Translations under genes and position numbers: made by a program | Notes under the pieces: model-generated | Told to the model about the DNA's origin: nothing | What the model saw: only the letters and a program-made list of their open reading frames with translations | The model's database searches: none | From: Perna viridis | Lineage: Eukaryota | DNA length: 64,000 nt | NCBI GenBank assembly: GCA_037379345.1 | Contig: CM074511.1 | Span: 25,217,171 to 25,281,170 of the forward strand | Reading direction: 5' to 3' | Part shown: in pieces, positions 36,656 to 45,051 of the stretch | How positions within the stretch are numbered: position 1 is the stretch's first letter | Layout of the letters: every line of letters starts with the position of its first letter

Positions 36656-36745
36656 ATGGCATCGAACAGAGAGACGGATGAAGAAAATAATTTTGGATTC
36701 TTTGATATAGGATTGAGGATTTTTCAAGTTAGAGACGAGCGACAG
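36656..36745 (+). CDS. TPR-TIR gene exon 1 (MASNRETDEENNFGFFDIGLRIFQVRDERQ)
   Basis: ATG, 90 nt, CAG|gtaatt donor; also conserved in the duplicate at about 51563. Confidence 0.7.
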
Positions 36746-39700
36746 GTAATTTTTTTATTTCCATATCTACCAAACACATCATGATTTATATTGGTCATTT
36801 TTAAATTAATATATAAATTCATATGCTTTGTCATGATCTTTATATACGAATGTTATGATGGGCATTGGCCTGTCCAGAAGAATTGTTAAATTTTGTTAAT
36901 TTTTGCACAGTTGAGTAAATTAAAACATGGAACCCCCAACAATACTTTAAATAAGCATTACGGTTTACAGTAACATATACGACGGATGACATTTGAGTTA
37001 GACCTCTGACGAAGGTTCCAAACATGGGACCGAAACCAACCAGATTTAAACAACAGCTCATGACAACTGTCAGATTTGAGTGATGGATTGTGTTATAGTT
37101 AGTTCTTCAGTCGGTTTGCCATTTTTTGTTCTTGTACCTTTTTTTTCTTCCGACTGCAGGCCATTAGTGAAGCCTTGCCGCAACTTGAATATGTGACAAT
37201 TATCACATTATCAAGGGCTGTTAGTAGTATGGTGCAGCATTACCTGTTCTTTATTTTGCATATATCCCGAAACCCCTTTTCAAAAATTCCAGCTTGGAAC
37301 CCACCCCTATTTAATAATTTCGGGACCTATTCCTCATCATTATTTGACAATCATCATTACTCATCATTACTTCATAGATCTTTAAACATAACTCATGCAG
37401 GAGACACCCAGGGATCTTCGACATGTGGGATGTTGCCATTCAGACGTCGACATCTCTGTAATTACTGATATCTTTTTACTAACATTAAATATTCACAAGG
37501 CCAAGATGAGCAAATCAGGCCCTCTAGGGCCTTTTGTTTTAAAAACAAACACTTGTCACAAGTTTTATTTTCAGCTACAATATCTCAGAGAAGAGCAAAT
37601 TTTGGAATCAGCTTACTGTCAAGAATATGTTAAAGCAGTATCTAAAAACTTTGAATGCATGATTAGGTACCAGATGCCTGGAGAAAAGGAAAATGCAATT
37701 AAAGAGCTAGAACAGGTAATAAATGGCATTTTATATACTGTTCCATGTAATAATCAGGCAGGTTCAACCAATGATATATATTTAAAAAAAGCGACCTTTC
37801 CTCGCTGCCATGAAATTCATCATTAATGTATTCATATCGTAACACGAAAAAAAATCTCATTTCATATCTACATAACGTGTGTTTTTTTTTTCTAAATAAA
37901 AATAGGACATTCTAATTTATAAAAAAAAAGTGTTCTTGATTTTCTGCATGATTATTACTTGACGTTTAAATCTCAAAAACGGTTAAAATGACTGTGTGGA
38001 ATGTATAGTAGTGTATAGCTACATATTGTGATATTGTAAGAACTGCAAAAAATCTCAACTGACACAGTGCAATTAAGGTAGTAGACCTGGGGTAAGGGAG
38101 GTAATCCAAATTGAAAGGATTTTAGACACAAGAGCGTTTGAATGATTCCTAATATGAACGCTTCAAAGAGATACTGATGTTAAAACTGACATGAAAATAA
38201 CCCTAAGAAAGAGTTGACTAATAACCTTGCCAGTTTTATAACTCCTCAACCTTTTAGAGATAAAAAAAAATATACTTTTTTTTATATTCCTTTTAAGACT
38301 TCAAGCTTTCTGTTTTCTTTTTGTTCCCTTGTTCAGCATGTGACTCTAACCAGCATTGTACTATGTTTAGCATACAAGTTTGTCATTTCGTACAGAAGTA
38401 TGAAATACACGGTGAACTGTTCTGAAAATTTCTTCATTGATTTGCATATGTTTAGTCCATATAATAACATGGGGTAGGCATTGGCTAAATCAGCGAGCAC
38501 CGTGAGCTTTACAATATATGTACCGTCTGTGCGAAACTCGTTGGGGTCGACGCGGATGACAAGTGCAATATTTTTATTTATATTTTAGCAGCAAGCAAGA
38601 TCAATACATCTATTTGAAAATCTGTCGTGTTAATTAATGGGGGAGTTTTTTTTCAATAAATAAATAACTTGAGCATACCCCCTTTCCCCTCCAAAATGAC
38701 CAATAACTTTATAACACTTCGCAATACTTTACATTTTTTATCCCTTAAGGGGATTTCTAGCAACATCTATTTCAGTTTTGGCCAGTCAAATCAATCTGTA
38801 CAGATATCGGATATATTACATTTCTCCAGGGATGGTGGGAATATTTTAGGTAGTACAATACAGTTAGGTCATTTCTGAAAATTTGGTCTCATTTTGTTGA
38901 AATAAAGCTGTTTTTAGGCAGTCCACACAGAAATTTCTAGTGTTTTGTCATAAAAAAATGCATATTTTTGAGATCCTTGTTGTGTGGAGGTTCAGGTCAT
39001 TTATAAGCAATTTAGTGATTATTGTTATAAAATCCAGTAGCCATGGTAAATTACTGAAAAAAATATTACTGAGTTTTAGCACAAATCAGGGTTGCCTTTC
39101 CAAAACTAACAGCCAATTACTGTGTTTTATAAAATACCAGGCACTTAGACACTACCACAGGATGAAAGCATGCATGGAGTAGGTGGAAAAAGGGTGAAAA
39201 TAATAAGACCCTTTTCGATTCATTTTCTCACAATTTTAGTTCCAAAAGTTCGTGCGAAATAAGGTATTTTGAATATCATCCATCTGGTACCAGTATCGTA
39301 TTGCATATCCCTGAGCGGGTGTACGTCAAAACATGGATGCTATTAAAATATAGTGCATTTTCTTTTCTCCTCTCTACAAACTAATGTTTTGTCAAAAGAT
39401 ATGAACGAGTAATCAAGGGAACCAAGGTTATAGCGGTAATCAAAAGAATGTAATCCAGGGACAAAGACCAGACATAGAAAACAGACATACACAACAAAGA
39501 ACATAAAGTAATTAAAATCATACATACAAAGTAACAAAAGTAAATGAGCAACTTGGACTCCATTAAAAACTGGGAGCATGGACCAGGTGCACCGGTAGGG
39601 TAAGCGTCCTCTGCTTTTCTAGACACACCCGCCGAGTTGCTCATAAAAAGTCAAGTCCGGGGTAGACAAACGAGGAAAGGAAAACTATGACCCGTTGAAT

Positions 39701-42700: not shown

Positions 42701-45051
42701 TGAAATTTTCGTCGAAATTGTAAATCATTTTGAAAACGAGCCCTCAAACGAACAGGATTCAATTCTGCTATCGAGATCATATGCTTATCTTATTTACTTA
42801 TGTTTACGAAAGAATCATTTATATAAAGAGTCGAAAATGACAAAAATAAGAGTAAAAGGCATTGTTGTTCGTGACAACCCAGAAAAGGTGATCGAAATTG
42901 TAATAGCGTTGAACGATAAACATCCCGACCGCGTTGCGTTAAATAAAATAGGAATTATATACACACAGGAGTCAAAATGGGACCAAGCAGAAAGAGTCTT
43001 AACGAAATCCATACAAAATTTTCCAGAATGGAACTGGTATGCGTATTCGTGGCTTTGCTACTTGTTTTTACAAAAACACGTTGAGAAAGTAAAAGACGAA
43101 CGAACGAAACGAGAGCGCAATAAGATGGAATCAACGGATCTTATGACAGCAAAAACATTCGGGAAACAAGCTTTAGATATGCGAAAAACAAGTCTTACTC
43201 TTTATAGAATGGCAAAGGTTTGCTCGTATTTGGGAAACCCAGAAGAAGCCATTGGGTATTTAAGAGACGCACTTAGTACCCATGAATGTGAAAGACATGC
43301 TGCTATGTACTCTTTACTTGGTTCATGCTTGTATGAAGAAAACAAAATTGATGATGCATTTCAAATGCTGAAAATTGCAACGACATTGGAACCTAAAAAT
43401 CAAAAAGATCCTTTGATATATCGAGATTTCTTATTACTGCTGTTGCGCAGGTTCAGAGAGAATGAAAAACGGCAAAGGAATGACAAATTTGGTAGAAGAA
43501 ATGAATTGGAAATAATATGCTGCCTGTTAGAGGAAGGCCATAGGAAGCACAAGATGAGAATAAAGTATCAGACAATAGGGGCACTTAACGATTACCCCCA
43601 TGAAATGATAGAAGTGATATTTGTCATGACGAACCAGGAATTAACAAAGAGAAGGAAAGTTATTATTGACATGTGCATAGAAGGATTCAAGCATCACAAG
43701 GGAAATGGGGTAAAAAGACGATGTACTATCCTTGAGGCATTCTATGACGAACGTCTCAAATCCCCAGTCAACGAGGAAGAAGCAGAAGAGAACGAACCAA
43801 CTACCAGCGAGACCACAACACCTCAAATACTTGTAGGAGATGTCAAGTTCGACTATTACATTCTTTTTCCTCGGTCTGCCAGAAGTTGGATTAAAAATTT
43901 CTACATAGACATACTTGGTTCTGATATCAACTCAAAAGAACAGTTGTTGAGAGGTATCATATCACCCTTTTTATATCGTTCATTAGTTTATAGTATTTCA
44001 TGAGTCGTCATCCATTTTTTTGGGGCTTTGTAAAAAAATACATATTCAGAGTTACTGTACTTTACTATAAAATAGAACGAAATTGTTTTAATTGTATCCT
44101 TTATGTTCTTTTCCCAAAAACTTAGCTTGATGAATATCTCATCCGTAGTCCACTACATTGAATCCGTGATATTACTGAACGATACGATACGAATCCTCTC
44201 GTGTCGATTTTATTTTTGATTGCACATCTACCGCCGCTTGTGATTACAATTGCTATTGAAATTACTTGCACTTTACTTCTTGTAATTTTTTGCACATAAT
44301 TGAGAGACTTTTCTAGGTCTTGCCTCCAGTGGTTTTATGGGTATAGGTTTTATTTTTGAAAGATGCGGAAGTGGCGCTGTAAAGCTGAAAAAGAATAAAC
44401 CTTCATTGTTCCGCAAACTAAATGAAAGGTTTTATACGAGTACTAGTAAAGTAATTAATTCATGGAAATGAACTAATAGAAACTTACAATATACTCCAGT
44501 GAAAAAAAAAACATATTATAGGTTTGGCGCGAGTGTGGTTCGCTTTTGTAGTATTAATTGGTTACTATACCTCTTTTGGTTGTAAAAAAAAAAGATGCAT
44601 AACATTATAAAATCATGAATGCAAATACCGTTTTGCAAAATGAGTGCTTCAGAATGAAAAAATAATAATAAAAAGGATCTATTAAAAAAAGGACGTTAAC
44701 AAGAAAAAGAGGCATAAAATACTTAATAGTTATTCATGTTCTTTCTTTTTATTTTCAGGTCGGAAATTCAAACCTAGCGACACAGCCTCCTCTGTCCTAA
44801 AGGAATGTAAAAAGATTCTAATCGTTATTACTGAAGACTTTGACAATTCACCCGTAAAAACCTTGGCACAAGAACTCCTTAAACAGGGCATTGACAGAAA
44901 AGGTGATGTCATACCGATTCTGAAGGATGCAGAAAGGATTCCAGACTTTTTACAAGTAATAGAACCGTGTGATGTAGATGATATTTTCAGGATAAGGAAT
45001 GCAATTCTTAGCTATAACATTGAAAGTGACAGCACGTGCACAGATCCCTGA
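36656..45051 (+). CDS. TPR-repeat protein with C-terminal TIR-like domain (TTC22-like), 4 coding exons, 781 aa
   Basis: Exons 36656-36745, 37575-37715, 42132-43953 and 44759-45051 all have ag/gt boundaries and compatible phases (0,0,1), giving 2346 nt with no internal stop. TPR-like units: ALNKIGIIY...WDQAERVLTKSI..FP; LYRMAKVCSYLGNPEEAIGYLRDAL; MYSLLGSCLYEENKIDDAFQMLKIATTLEP. An acidic linker (EEEAEENEPTT) precedes TIR-like KFDYYILF...W...L....RGRKFKP...VLKECKKILIVITEDF...VIPIL...IPDFLQ. Confidence 0.82.
37575..37715 (+). CDS. TPR-TIR gene exon 2
   Basis: ttttcag acceptor, 141 nt open, CAG|gtaata donor. Confidence 0.78.
39404..40130 (-). mobile_element. Naiad-type element 3' fragment
   Basis: ORF 39685-40149 encodes the RT C-terminus/thumb; family 3' UTR follows. 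Confidence 0.92.
40755..41044. mobile_element. MITE, 14-bp perfect TIR, 5-bp TSD
   Basis: caggcgcgtagctg...cagctacgcgcctg flanked by ccttt on both sides. Confidence 0.85.
42132..43953 (+). CDS. TPR-TIR gene exon 3 (TPR solenoid and start of TIR)
   Basis: 1822-nt open exon matching the 615-aa ORF; polypyrimidine tract + tag acceptor; AG|gtatca donor. Confidence 0.9.
44759..45051 (+). CDS. TPR-TIR gene exon 4 (rest of TIR-like domain)
   Basis: Strong acceptor ttctttttattttcag; phase 1 continues into ORF 44863-45051. Confidence 0.85.

What the first reader, a model, noticed from the sequence alone, without database searches (positions are those of the whole stretch)
36656..45051. Hidden TPR-sensor + TIR-effector gene: candidate uncharacterised invertebrate intracellular immune receptor
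Seen: the 615-aa ORF is exon 3 of an intact 781-aa, 4-exon gene. A TIR-like beta/alpha domain is split by intron 3, so the ORF track misses it. No signal peptide or transmembrane segment is evident. Established: TPR-plus-TIR architectures occur in invertebrate TTC22-like proteins and in bacterial anti-phage proteins, where TPRs sense and TIR signals or cleaves NAD+. Bivalves expand TIR families. Inference: this is a cytosolic sensor-effector without an NLR/STAND ATPase. The adjacent dead duplicate and heavy TE load fit a birth-and-death immune family.
Basis: partly seen in the sequence, partly recalled or inferred. Interest (0 to 1): 0.8.

Follow-up and report, generated by a model that had tools for sequence, protein, structure and literature searches.

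The report
Mussel TTC22-like TPR protein with degenerate TIR

Summary
Observation confirmed. The four exons (36656-36745, 37575-37715, 42132-43953, 44759-45051, + strand) read as 781 codons with no internal stop and GT-AG at every intron. All four exon peptides align in order with ~800-aa Mytilus proteins. Stranded RNA reads and two transcript contigs carry the exon 3/exon 4 junction.

The C-terminus is a TIR. An AlphaFold model of a close relative hits only TIR domains (MyD88, E 6e-7). A family profile matches TLR1/TLR2 TIRs at E 1e-23.

The first ~600 aa form a TPR solenoid. It aligns along nearly its whole length with vertebrate TTC22 (hhalign 98.5%, 458 columns).

The architecture is not new. 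TPR+TIR relatives occur in scallops, ark clams, Solemya and other mussels, and in amphioxus, where NCBI names one "TTC22-like".

This gene's clade has a degenerate TIR. The BB loop is shortened, the RD motif is gone, and the WCxYE motif holding the NADase-position Glu is lost. The window's exon 4 scores 14.9 bits against Pfam's cut-off of 28. An NAD-cleaving effector role is therefore unlikely.

Two dead partial duplicates exist, one 6.4 kb downstream and one 5 Mb away. Even so, the paralogues pair one-to-one with Mytilus genes, so turnover is modest.

Verdict: an ordinary but unstudied TIR-domain adaptor gene, a new member of a known kind.

The parts
36656..36745 (+). Exon 1: ATG and the first 30 codons, with a hydrophilic N-terminus and no signal peptide
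   Evidence: GT donor at 36746. The peptide is 54% identical to the N-terminus of Mytilus P0001. The highest Kyte-Doolittle mean is -0.12.
37575..37715 (+). Exon 2: 47 codons, phase 0
   Evidence: AG/GT boundaries. It aligns in order with residues ~31-77 of P0001-P0005.
42132..43953 (+). Exon 3: 607 codons plus 1 base. It encodes the TTC22-like TPR solenoid and the first strand and helix of the TIR. It contains the 615-aa ORF.
   Evidence: Pfam TPR_12 scores 3e-12. The AF2 model is all-helical with pLDDT 71. Transcript contigs start matching the genome exactly at the acceptor.
43194..43373 (+). The best canonical TPR pair inside exon 3 (exon-3 residues 355-414)
   Evidence: Pfam TPR_12, TPR_1 and TPR_2 all score above their cut-offs.
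43848..43953 (+). First part of the TIR: Box 1 (FDYYILF) and helix A
   Evidence: It aligns with YDFFVSHS..D..WV of the canonical paralogues and with TLR2 Box 1 in the relative P0002.
43954..44758 (+). Intron 3 (805 nt, phase 1, inside a Gly codon), which splits the TIR
   Evidence: A spliced joint with GT..AG ends is seen in two raw RNA runs and two transcript contigs. The same break position (profile ~681-688) occurs in the paralogues on C1:19.66 Mb and C7.
44759..45051 (+). Exon 4: the rest of the TIR (shortened BB loop through to helix E), a short tail and the TGA stop
   Evidence: Pfam TIR_2 is below threshold (E 0.038, 14.9 bits against 28). The peptide is 43% identical to P0001. Motif comparison.
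45052..45300 (+). 3' UTR, at least this far; the contigs continue 34 and 197 nt beyond 45300
   Evidence: table 8.
39403..40130 (-). Repeat-element fragment inside intron 2. It is not part of the gene.
   Evidence: Five further copies in the window at 89-95% identity. RNA depth is very high, coming from copies elsewhere. Its ORF has no Pfam match.
51486..54442 (+). Dead tandem duplicate. It keeps the 5' UTR and start of exon 1 (51486-51612), the tail of exon 3 (51783-51850), intron 3 (51852-52221, then inserted repeat elements) and exon 4 with a frameshift (53971-54360). The whole TPR region is deleted.
   Evidence: blastn and tblastn within the window. ORF list.
62820..63021 (+). Continuation of the dead copy's 3' UTR, on the far side of the stretch an earlier first-stage note calls an LTR retrotransposon
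   Evidence: 74% identity to 45169-45375. An earlier scan note places an LTR element at 54432-62810.

Best explanation
This is an intact, spliced, weakly transcribed mussel gene for a 781-aa cytosolic protein. The first ~600 residues are a TPR superhelix homologous to vertebrate TTC22. The last ~130 residues are a TIR domain of the TLR/MyD88 type. It belongs to an old invertebrate TTC22-like-plus-TIR family found in bivalves and amphioxus. Within that family it sits in a bivalve-wide clade whose TIR has diverged: Box 1 and the D/E strands are kept, the BB loop is shortened without the RD motif, and WCxYE is lost.

Most likely mechanism (inferred, not shown): the TPR solenoid binds a protein or nucleic-acid partner. 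The TIR makes non-enzymatic TIR-TIR contacts with TLR or MyD88-type partners. The protein would then act as an accessory adaptor, or, given the eroded BB loop, as a modulator or decoy of TLR-pathway signalling rather than as an NAD-consuming effector.
For: - Gene model and splicing.
- TIR fold: the AF2 model of the C-terminal 159 aa of relative P0002 has pLDDT 70.7 and a beta-alpha-beta order. Every Foldseek row listed is a TIR apart from one Act1/IL-17R (SEFIR) assembly at rank 40, led by MyD88 at E 6e-7, prob 1.00, TMt 0.68.
- TIR by sequence: the clade profile A1 hits MyD88 TIR at E 1e-3 over 110 positions. The broad family profile A4 hits TLR1/TLR2 TIRs at E ~1e-23 and MyD88 at ~3e-14, against 1e-8 for a bacterial TIR.
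- Canonical paralogues pass Pfam TIR, both in other species (P0019, P0020, P0028, P0037) and in this genome (C5 and C1:19.66 Mb).
- TTC22 homology: hhalign of the clade against vertebrate TTC22 gives 98.5%, E 1.6e-15 and 458 columns in order. The motifs NLNxxANLA, ARxxAEQGY and NWxAY are shared in the same order. A generic-TPR control aligned only 256 columns of repeats. The ESM Atlas nearest clusters are TTC22 and IFIT.
- Distribution: with the tree.
- Degenerate motifs.
- No transmembrane segment, signal peptide or ATPase.
- Similar identity to Mytilus across all exons (36-54%) argues that the TIR is still under constraint.
Against: - No functional or induction data of any kind were available. 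The immune role is inferred from the TIR domain alone.
- Expression is low (depth 1-20 in two runs).
- The window's own TIR could not be folded, because it is split between exons and the joined sequence was not submitted. The fold evidence comes from relative P0002, which is 37-39% identical to the window's two TIR pieces.
- An acidic residue (E in LAQEL) lies two positions after the aligned catalytic-Glu column, so catalysis cannot be strictly excluded. It is Ser in P0002.
- Vertebrate TTC22 has no established immune function, and the knockout mouse has no phenotype (PMC13693868).
Confidence: 0.55

Rival explanations
1. One reading: a sensor-effector in which ligand binding by the TPR solenoid oligomerises the TIR, which then cleaves NAD+ or makes a nucleotide signal, as in SARM1, plant TIRs and bacterial Thoeris or TIR-TPR systems.
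For: The TIR fold is present. Foldseek also lists NADase TIRs (AbTir, SPARTA, RUN1) at E 2e-4 to 2e-3. An acidic residue sits two positions from the catalytic column in the window and in most Mytilus relatives. TPR-controlled TIR defence exists in bacteria (bioRxiv 10.1101/2023.05.26.542521, listed).
Against: The best matches by fold and by profile are TLR1/2 and MyD88 TIRs, which are known as scaffolds (established knowledge). In this clade WCxYE is lost and the aligned Glu column holds Ala or Leu. The nearby Glu is Ser in P0002. The BB loop, needed for active-site assembly in known NADase TIRs (established knowledge), is shortened by about 8 residues. The domain order is the reverse of the actinobacterial TIR-TPR class (PMC7075850).
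Confidence: 0.12
2. An IFIT-like nucleic-acid binder: the TPR solenoid clamps foreign RNA as IFIT1 and IFIT5 do, and the TIR relays that recognition. This would be an invertebrate counterpart of IFITs coupled directly to TIR signalling.
For: VIA-align ranks IFIT5 first (Z 18.4, 380 residues aligned, model 1-518 against IFIT5 77-481). Several IFIT1 chains follow at Z ~17 with the longest aligned lengths. Foldseek lists IFIT5 and IFIT1 in its top 10. The ESM Atlas nearest clusters include IFIT5, IFIT1 and IFIT2 beside TTC22.
Against: The Z scores are tied within 1 unit with APC/C subunits, OGT and LGN, which is expected for any long TPR. Two family profiles searched against PDB sequences listed no IFIT among their 60 best rows. 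RNA-binding residues were not examined. IFITs are reported only from jawed vertebrates (PMC3688568, abstract).
Confidence: 0.13
3. A non-immune scaffold: the protein does whatever TTC22 does (protein-protein scaffolding, for example with ribosomal or RNA-modification factors), and the eroded TIR is a vestige with little or no signalling role.
For: Full-length homology to TTC22. TIR motifs are degenerate and Pfam is below threshold. Expression is low. Hemichordate TTC22-like proteins and vertebrate TTC22 lack a TIR altogether.
Against: The TIR part is as conserved between this mussel and Mytilus as the rest of the protein (43% against 44%). It still folds as a TIR in the relative. The clade has kept it across scallop and mussels.
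Confidence: 0.15
4. The locus is a decaying or non-functional gene copy whose open frame is kept by chance.
For: Two dead partial copies exist. The introns are rich in repeat elements. Expression is low.
Against: There are 781 codons without a stop across four exons with canonical splice sites. Spliced, strand-specific RNA was seen in runs from three studies. The closest Mytilus relatives are intact.
Confidence: 0.03

Closest known systems
Invertebrate TTC22-like TPR-TIR proteins, e.g. Branchiostoma belcheri XP_019643233.1 'TTC22-like', the Tegillarca granosa cluster KAJ8311974-8, Mytilus trossulus LOC134691195 and LOC134705203, and Argopecten and Mizuhopecten 'uncharacterized proteins'
   Same: The same ~750-830-aa architecture: a TTC22-like TPR region followed by a C-terminal TIR. 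Matches run in order along the full length (HMMER E from 1e-14 down to 0). In the genomic paralogues examined the phase-1 intron lies at the same place inside the TIR. All are functionally uncharacterised.
   Different: The window gene's clade (with Mytilus P0001-5, P0002 and Argopecten, which show it directly; Solemya P0013 is in the clade but its model lacks the TIR) has a shortened BB loop and no WCxYE, and falls below Pfam's TIR threshold. The other clade, amphioxus and this genome's C5 and C1:19.66 Mb paralogues keep canonical motifs.
Vertebrate TTC22
   Same: The TPR region aligns in order over 458 columns (hhalign 98.5%, E 1.6e-15) and shares NLNxxANLA, ARCLAEQGY and NWxAY.
   Different: TTC22 has no TIR domain. 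It is ~570 aa with ~17% identity. Its reported roles concern RPL4/WTAP in cancer cells, and the knockout mouse has no phenotype (PMC13693868).
TLR and MyD88 TIR domains (Pfam PF01582 / PF13676)
   Same: The fold (Foldseek MyD88 E 6e-7). Box 1. The conserved IPI...IPxxL D/E region. The family profile matches TLR1/2 at E 1e-23.
   Different: The window protein scores 14.9 bits against a 28-bit threshold. The RD of Box 2 is missing, the BB loop is ~8 residues shorter, and WCxYE is absent. There is no death domain or LRR ectodomain.
IFIT1 / IFIT5
   Same: A long closed TPR superhelix. It is the best VIA-align match with the longest aligned span (Z 18.4, 380 residues). It is also an ESM Atlas neighbour.
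   Different: No sequence-level match appeared among the 60 best rows of either profile search. The Z scores are tied with unrelated TPR proteins. IFITs have no TIR.
Bacterial TIR-TPR defence proteins: the actinobacterial 'group 6' TIR-TPR class and the Bacillus cereus BcTir/BcTpr operon
   Same: A TIR is combined with TPR repeats. The TPR is proposed to control or sense (PMC7075850; bioRxiv 10.1101/2023.05.26.542521).
   Different: The group-6 class has the TIR at the N-terminus, and the B. cereus system has TIR and TPR on separate proteins. Bacterial TIRs match the family profile far worse than TLR TIRs do (1e-8 against 1e-23). There is no sign of shared descent.

Membership tests
TIR domain superfamily | Flavodoxin-like beta-alpha fold that superposes on solved TIR domains | tested here: met
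   Tested on relative P0002 (37-39% identical to the window's two TIR pieces). Every Foldseek row listed is a TIR apart from one Act1/IL-17R (SEFIR) assembly, led by MyD88 at E 6e-7, prob 1.00. The window's own domain was not folded because it is split by intron 3.
TIR domain superfamily | Score above Pfam's gathering threshold for PF01582 or PF13676 | tested here: not met
   Window exon 4 scores TIR_2 14.9 bits against 28. Mytilus P0005 scores 15.3 bits. Paralogues in the same family do pass, at 43-76 bits.
TIR domain superfamily | Box 1 motif, (F/Y)D(x)(F/Y) on strand A, followed by D/E..W | tested here: met
   FDYYILFPRSARSW at the end of exon 3 aligns with YDFFVSHS..D..WV.
TIR domain superfamily | Box 2 / BB loop, RDxxPG | tested here: not met
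   The window has RKFKPS. Two 4-residue deletions flank the retained Pro, and the RD is absent.
NADase-type TIR (SARM1, plant TIR, Thoeris-like) | Catalytic Glu at the start of helix C, the E of WCxYE-type motifs | tested here: inconclusive
   The aligned column holds Ala (window) or Leu (Mytilus). A Glu lies two positions downstream but is Ser in P0002. No structural superposition at residue level was possible.
TTC22-like TPR family | Near-full-length profile-profile match to vertebrate TTC22, in order, with shared signature motifs | tested here: met
   hhalign 98.5%, E 1.6e-15, 458 columns, HMM 47-595 against 63-553. A control against generic TPR proteins covered only 256 columns of repeats.
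TTC22-like TPR family | TPR repeats detectable by Pfam and an all-helical solenoid fold | tested here: met
   TPR_12 3e-12, TPR_1 2e-10. The AF2 model is a helix-turn-helix solenoid. The top fold matches are TPR proteins.
IFIT family | Sequence homology to IFIT1, IFIT2 or IFIT5 | tested here: not met
   No IFIT chain appears among the 60 best rows of either family-profile search of PDB sequences.
IFIT family | A structural match that stands clearly above other TPR proteins | tested here: inconclusive
   IFIT5 has Z 18.4 with 380 residues aligned, but APC/C scores 17.9 and OGT 17.3.
NLR / STAND receptors | A central NACHT or NB-ARC P-loop ATPase | tested here: not met
   No such Pfam hit in any exon or in the Mytilus homologues. 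The region before the TIR is all-helical TPR.
Bacterial TIR-TPR defence proteins | N-terminal TIR followed by C-terminal TPRs, with a TIR of bacterial type | tested here: not met
   The order here is TPR then TIR. The family profile prefers TLR TIRs (1e-23) over a bacterial TIR (1e-8). The class description is from PMC7075850.

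The most novel reading that the evidence does not exclude
TTC22, an orphan vertebrate protein with no knockout phenotype, descends from an ancient family of cytosolic TPR-TIR immune adaptors that survives in bivalves and amphioxus. Within bivalves, one old clade, including this gene, has remodelled its TIR (short BB loop, no WCxYE) into a decoy or inhibitor of TLR/MyD88 signalling, or into a relay for an IFIT-like nucleic-acid clamp.
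Probability: 0.25. Interest if true: 0.55.

Novelty: new member of a known kind. Interest (0 to 1): 0.3.

Why it matters
Bivalves carry many uncharacterised cytosolic TIR-domain proteins (PMC10279657). This locus adds a verified, expressed gene model for one of them.

The work also shows three things:
- The family's TPR part is homologous to vertebrate TTC22.
- The family splits into a clade with a canonical TIR and a clade with a degenerate TIR.
- Several 'TPR repeat proteins' in metagenome catalogues are truncated ORF calls of such eukaryotic genes, ending at the conserved intron.

If the degenerate-TIR clade proves to be a regulator of TLR signalling, it would be a convenient entry point into mussel innate-immune wiring and into the unknown function of TTC22. 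As it stands, this is an annotation-level result and not a new kind of system.

Tried and rejected
- The joined protein was never sent anywhere. Each exon was searched by reference. The only joined operation was an in-script count of length and stop codons. As a result the window's own TIR could not be scanned or folded as one piece. I used a natural transcript-derived relative instead (L001:2005-2481, from P0002).
- IFIT homology by sequence: two family profiles against PDB sequences listed no IFIT in their 60 best rows. It is kept only as a structural lead.
- A single-sequence phmmer of the relative's TIR against PDB gave only TLR2 at E 0.9. That is too weak alone, but the alignment was sensible.
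- The word-index protein search found only Mytilus proteins, which wrongly suggested a mytilid-only family. The exhaustive HMMER search corrected this.
- The copy at C1:30.39 Mb is not a retrocopy. It keeps both introns and is a 4.1-kb segmental duplicate at 95.9% identity, truncated at window position 44823, with stops and frameshifts.
- Literature: I could not read Gerdol et al. 2017, which classifies bivalve TIR-DC families, because it is not in the library. I therefore cannot say which ecTIR-DC family number, if any, this corresponds to.
- Pfam gave no match for the intronic repeat-element ORFs.
- A first attempt to print the exon-3 tail was out of frame.
- A human TTC22 entry (P0237) came back and was not used in any alignment.

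Full report
**The observation**

The 615-aa ORF at 42156-44003 is present. The frame is open from 42132, directly after a polypyrimidine tract and an AG. The four proposed exons are 36656-36745, 37575-37715, 42132-43953 and 44759-45051. All have GT donors and AG acceptors, and their phases are 0, 0, 0 and 1. Together they make 2346 nt, which is 781 codons plus TGA, with no internal stop. The junction codon between exons 3 and 4 is G|GT, a glycine.

Every search used single exons by reference. The only joined step was a count of length and stops inside a script.

**Independent support for the model**

The exon-3 peptide finds 796-828-aa proteins of Mytilus coruscus, M. galloprovincialis, M. trossulus and M. 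edulis at 41-43% identity and 99-100% coverage. When the four exon peptides are aligned as separate rows with five of these proteins, they tile them in order and without overlap. Identity to P0001 is 54, 36, 44 and 43%.

Of 24 runs listed, 20 hold 70-84% of the sampled words of the stretch 42132-45051. Exons make up 72% of that stretch. Laying four runs on 39400-45300 gave these results:
- A joint 43951>44757 that skips 805 nt with GT..AG ends. By the tool's stated +2 shift this equals 43953/44759.
- The joint is seen in 3 and 5 raw reads of two stranded RNA-seq runs, and in one transcript contig each of two other runs (2605 and 2731 nt).
- Depth is 1-20 over exons 3 and 4 and about 0 over intron 3. 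All reads lie in the orientation expected for a + strand RNA.
- Both contigs begin to match the genome exactly at the exon-3 acceptor. They carry 205 and 169 further 5' letters that do not lie on the laid stretch. That fits exon 2 (141 nt) plus part of exon 1, but I did not see those letters.
- The 3' UTR extends beyond 45300.

Junction 36745/37575 was not tested with reads.

**The C-terminal domain**

Exon 4 alone gives only a sub-threshold Pfam TIR_2 match (E 0.038, 14.9 bits against a cut-off of 28). The Mytilus proteins do no better.

The domain is split by intron 3, so I used a natural relative whose coding sequence is uninterrupted. This is P0002, encoded on a 2694-nt contig of a public-run assembly that carries the whole 828-aa reading frame without interruption, so I take it for a transcript. 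Its last 159 residues (L001:2005-2481) were folded with the family alignment. The model has pLDDT 70.7 and a strand-helix order typical of a flavodoxin-like domain.

Foldseek against the PDB returned TIR domains in every listed row but one, an Act1/IL-17R (SEFIR) assembly at rank 40. MyD88 led at E 6e-7, probability 1.00 and TMt 0.68. Hydra TRR-2, TLR1/2/5/10, MAL, TRAM, BtpA, AbTir, SPARTA and plant TIRs followed.

Sequence profiles agree:
- The close-clade profile hits MyD88 TIR at E 1e-3 over 110 positions.
- A broader family profile hits TLR1 and TLR2 TIRs at about 1e-23, MyD88 at about 3e-14 and a bacterial TIR only at 1e-8.

The TIR is of the TLR/MyD88 type.

**The N-terminal 600 residues**

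Pfam sees only TPR repeats. The AF2 model of exon 3 (pLDDT 71) is an uninterrupted helix-turn-helix solenoid with one disordered insert at residues 65-123. It has no P-loop domain.

Fold searches return long TPR proteins. IFIT5 and IFIT1 give the longest alignments (Z 18.4 and ~17, 360-380 residues). They are tied within one Z unit with APC/C subunits and OGT. The ESM Atlas nearest clusters are TTC22 and IFITs.

I tested the TTC22 lead directly. A hemichordate 'TTC22-like' hit (P0076) brought in vertebrate TTC22 sequences. hhalign of the window's clade against eleven non-human vertebrate TTC22 proteins gave 98.5% probability, E 1.6e-15 and 458 columns in order (HMM 47-595 against 63-553). The motifs NLNxxANLA, ARxxAEQGY and NWxAY are shared in the same order. 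A control against generic TPR proteins scored nearly as well but covered only 256 columns of repeats. I accept TTC22 homology.

IFIT homology is not shown. No IFIT appeared among the 60 best rows of two profile searches of PDB sequences.

**Distribution**

The word-index searches found only Mytilus. The exhaustive HMMER search with the family profile found 11 proteins below 1e-30 and 66 below 1e-10. Named members include:
- Argopecten irradians, Mizuhopecten yessoensis and Solemya velum.
- A tandem cluster of 'TIR domain-containing proteins' in Tegillarca granosa.
- Several further Mytilus paralogues.
- Branchiostoma belcheri 'TTC22-like' and a B. lanceolatum protein.
- Ptychodera 'TTC22-like'.

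Many of these pass Pfam TIR well above threshold: P0017, P0018, P0019, P0020, P0028, P0030 and P0037. A 'TIR-TPR' class is also listed among the abbreviations of the Aplysia immunome paper (PMC9334734).

**This genome**

The assembly is 723 Mb in 46 contigs. An earlier scan note calls it a mussel, and the tree agrees. A family-profile search of the whole genome found the following:
- This gene.
- A paralogue on C7 at 8.76 Mb, beside a copy with stop codons.
- A pair on C1 at 19.66 Mb, one of them with stops.
- An intronless 790-aa ORF on C5 at 36.13 Mb, with TPRs and a canonical TIR (5e-13).
- A copy with stops on C8.
- A 4.1-kb segmental duplicate of window 40741-44823 on C1 at 30.39 Mb. It is 95.9% identical, retains the introns, is truncated inside exon 4, and carries stops and frameshifts.

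The last exon of the C1:19.66 Mb paralogue also carries a canonical TIR (3.7e-15).

In a maximum-likelihood tree rooted on vertebrate TTC22, bivalve sequences form two well-supported clades. One holds this gene, the Mytilus P0001-5 group, P0002, Argopecten and Solemya. The other holds Tegillarca, Mizuhopecten, further Mytilus paralogues, and this genome's C7 and C1:19.66 Mb genes. Each of those two pairs with a specific Mytilus gene.

The picture is a small family of old, fast-evolving, largely one-to-one orthologue groups with some dead duplicates. It is not a large birth-and-death expansion.

**The degenerate TIR**

I aligned TIR regions with the two window pieces kept as separate rows. The canonical paralogues show YDFFVSHS..D..WV, GCIADRDFxPG and SxWCxYE. 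The window's clade keeps Box 1 (FDYYILF...SW) and the IPI...IPDFL part. It differs in three ways:
- It has lost CIAD and four residues after the PG, so the BB loop is about 8 residues shorter.
- It has no RD.
- It replaces SxWCxYE with SPVKTLAQEL.

The column that holds the Glu of WCxYE is Ala in the window and Leu in Mytilus. This is the position of the catalytic Glu in NADase TIRs (established knowledge). A Glu two residues later is Ser in P0002.

This explains the sub-threshold Pfam score and argues against an NAD-cleaving effector. The TIR exon is as conserved between this mussel and Mytilus as the rest of the protein, so the domain is probably still used.

**The neighbouring dead copy**

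DNA and protein comparisons within the window show a tandem remnant:
- 5' UTR and the first 16 codons of exon 1 at 51486-51612.
- Directly after that, the last ~22 codons of exon 3 at 51783-51850.
- Intron 3 at 51852-52221, interrupted by a copy of the same repeat element that sits in intron 2 of the live gene.
- Exon 4 at 53971-54360 with a frameshift.
- 3' UTR at 54378-54442, resuming at 62820-63021 on the far side of the LTR retrotransposon noted earlier by the scan.

The whole TPR region is deleted.

**Mechanism and verdict**

Shown:
- A real, spliced, strand-specifically transcribed gene.
- A cytosolic protein with no signal peptide or transmembrane segment.
- A TTC22-homologous TPR solenoid followed by a TIR of TLR/MyD88 type with eroded BB-loop and helix-C motifs.
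- No ATPase domain.

Inferred: the TPR part binds a partner, and the TIR engages other TIR domains without catalysis. The protein would then be an accessory adaptor or, given the shortened BB loop, a modulator or decoy of TLR-pathway signalling.

The rivals cannot be excluded without experiments. They are an NADase effector, an IFIT-like RNA clamp and a non-immune TTC22-type scaffold.

The finding is a correct piece of annotation for an unstudied but already catalogued family. It is a new member of a known kind and of modest interest. The most interesting thread is evolutionary: vertebrate TTC22 appears to be the TIR-less relative of an old TPR-TIR family.

Noticed in passing
window 39403-40130; also 20159-20795, 52223-52945, 58535-59234, 62994-63628: A ~730-bp repeat-element fragment is present at least six times in the window at 89-95% identity. 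Its ~150-aa minus-strand ORF (KLYDKRDDFSFR...YGVFISQLIRYARAC) has no Pfam match. RNA depth over it is hundreds of times higher than over the gene, presumably from copies elsewhere.
   Followed up: partly
G000:C5:36133023-36135374 (L010:1492-3861, minus strand): One paralogue of the family is a single intronless 790-aa ORF with TPRs and a canonical TIR, on a long branch in the tree. The other paralogues keep the phase-1 intron inside the TIR. It may be a functional retrogene.
   Followed up: partly
proteins P0010, P0021, P0049, P0055 (Logan, ENA and JGI/IMG records): Several database proteins of this family, some labelled 'tetratricopeptide (TPR) repeat protein' in metagenome catalogues, end right after the ...FKG that precedes the conserved intron in the TIR. 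They look like unspliced ORF calls on eukaryotic contigs, not TIR-less proteins.
   Followed up: partly
G000:C1:30389085-30390886 (L003): A 4.1-kb segmental duplicate of window 40741-44823 lies 5 Mb away on the same chromosome. It covers part of intron 2, exon 3, intron 3 and 65 nt of exon 4. It is 95.9% identical, with five stops and frameshifts.
   Followed up: yes
window 54432-62810: The dead duplicate's 3' UTR stops matching at 54442 and resumes at 62820. This brackets the LTR retrotransposon reported by an earlier first-stage note and fits an insertion into that UTR.
   Followed up: partly
G000:C1:19657274-19667828 and C7:8748070-8766163: Two further loci hold tandem pairs of family members, one copy open and one with stops. 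This is the same live-plus-dead pattern as in the window.
   Followed up: no
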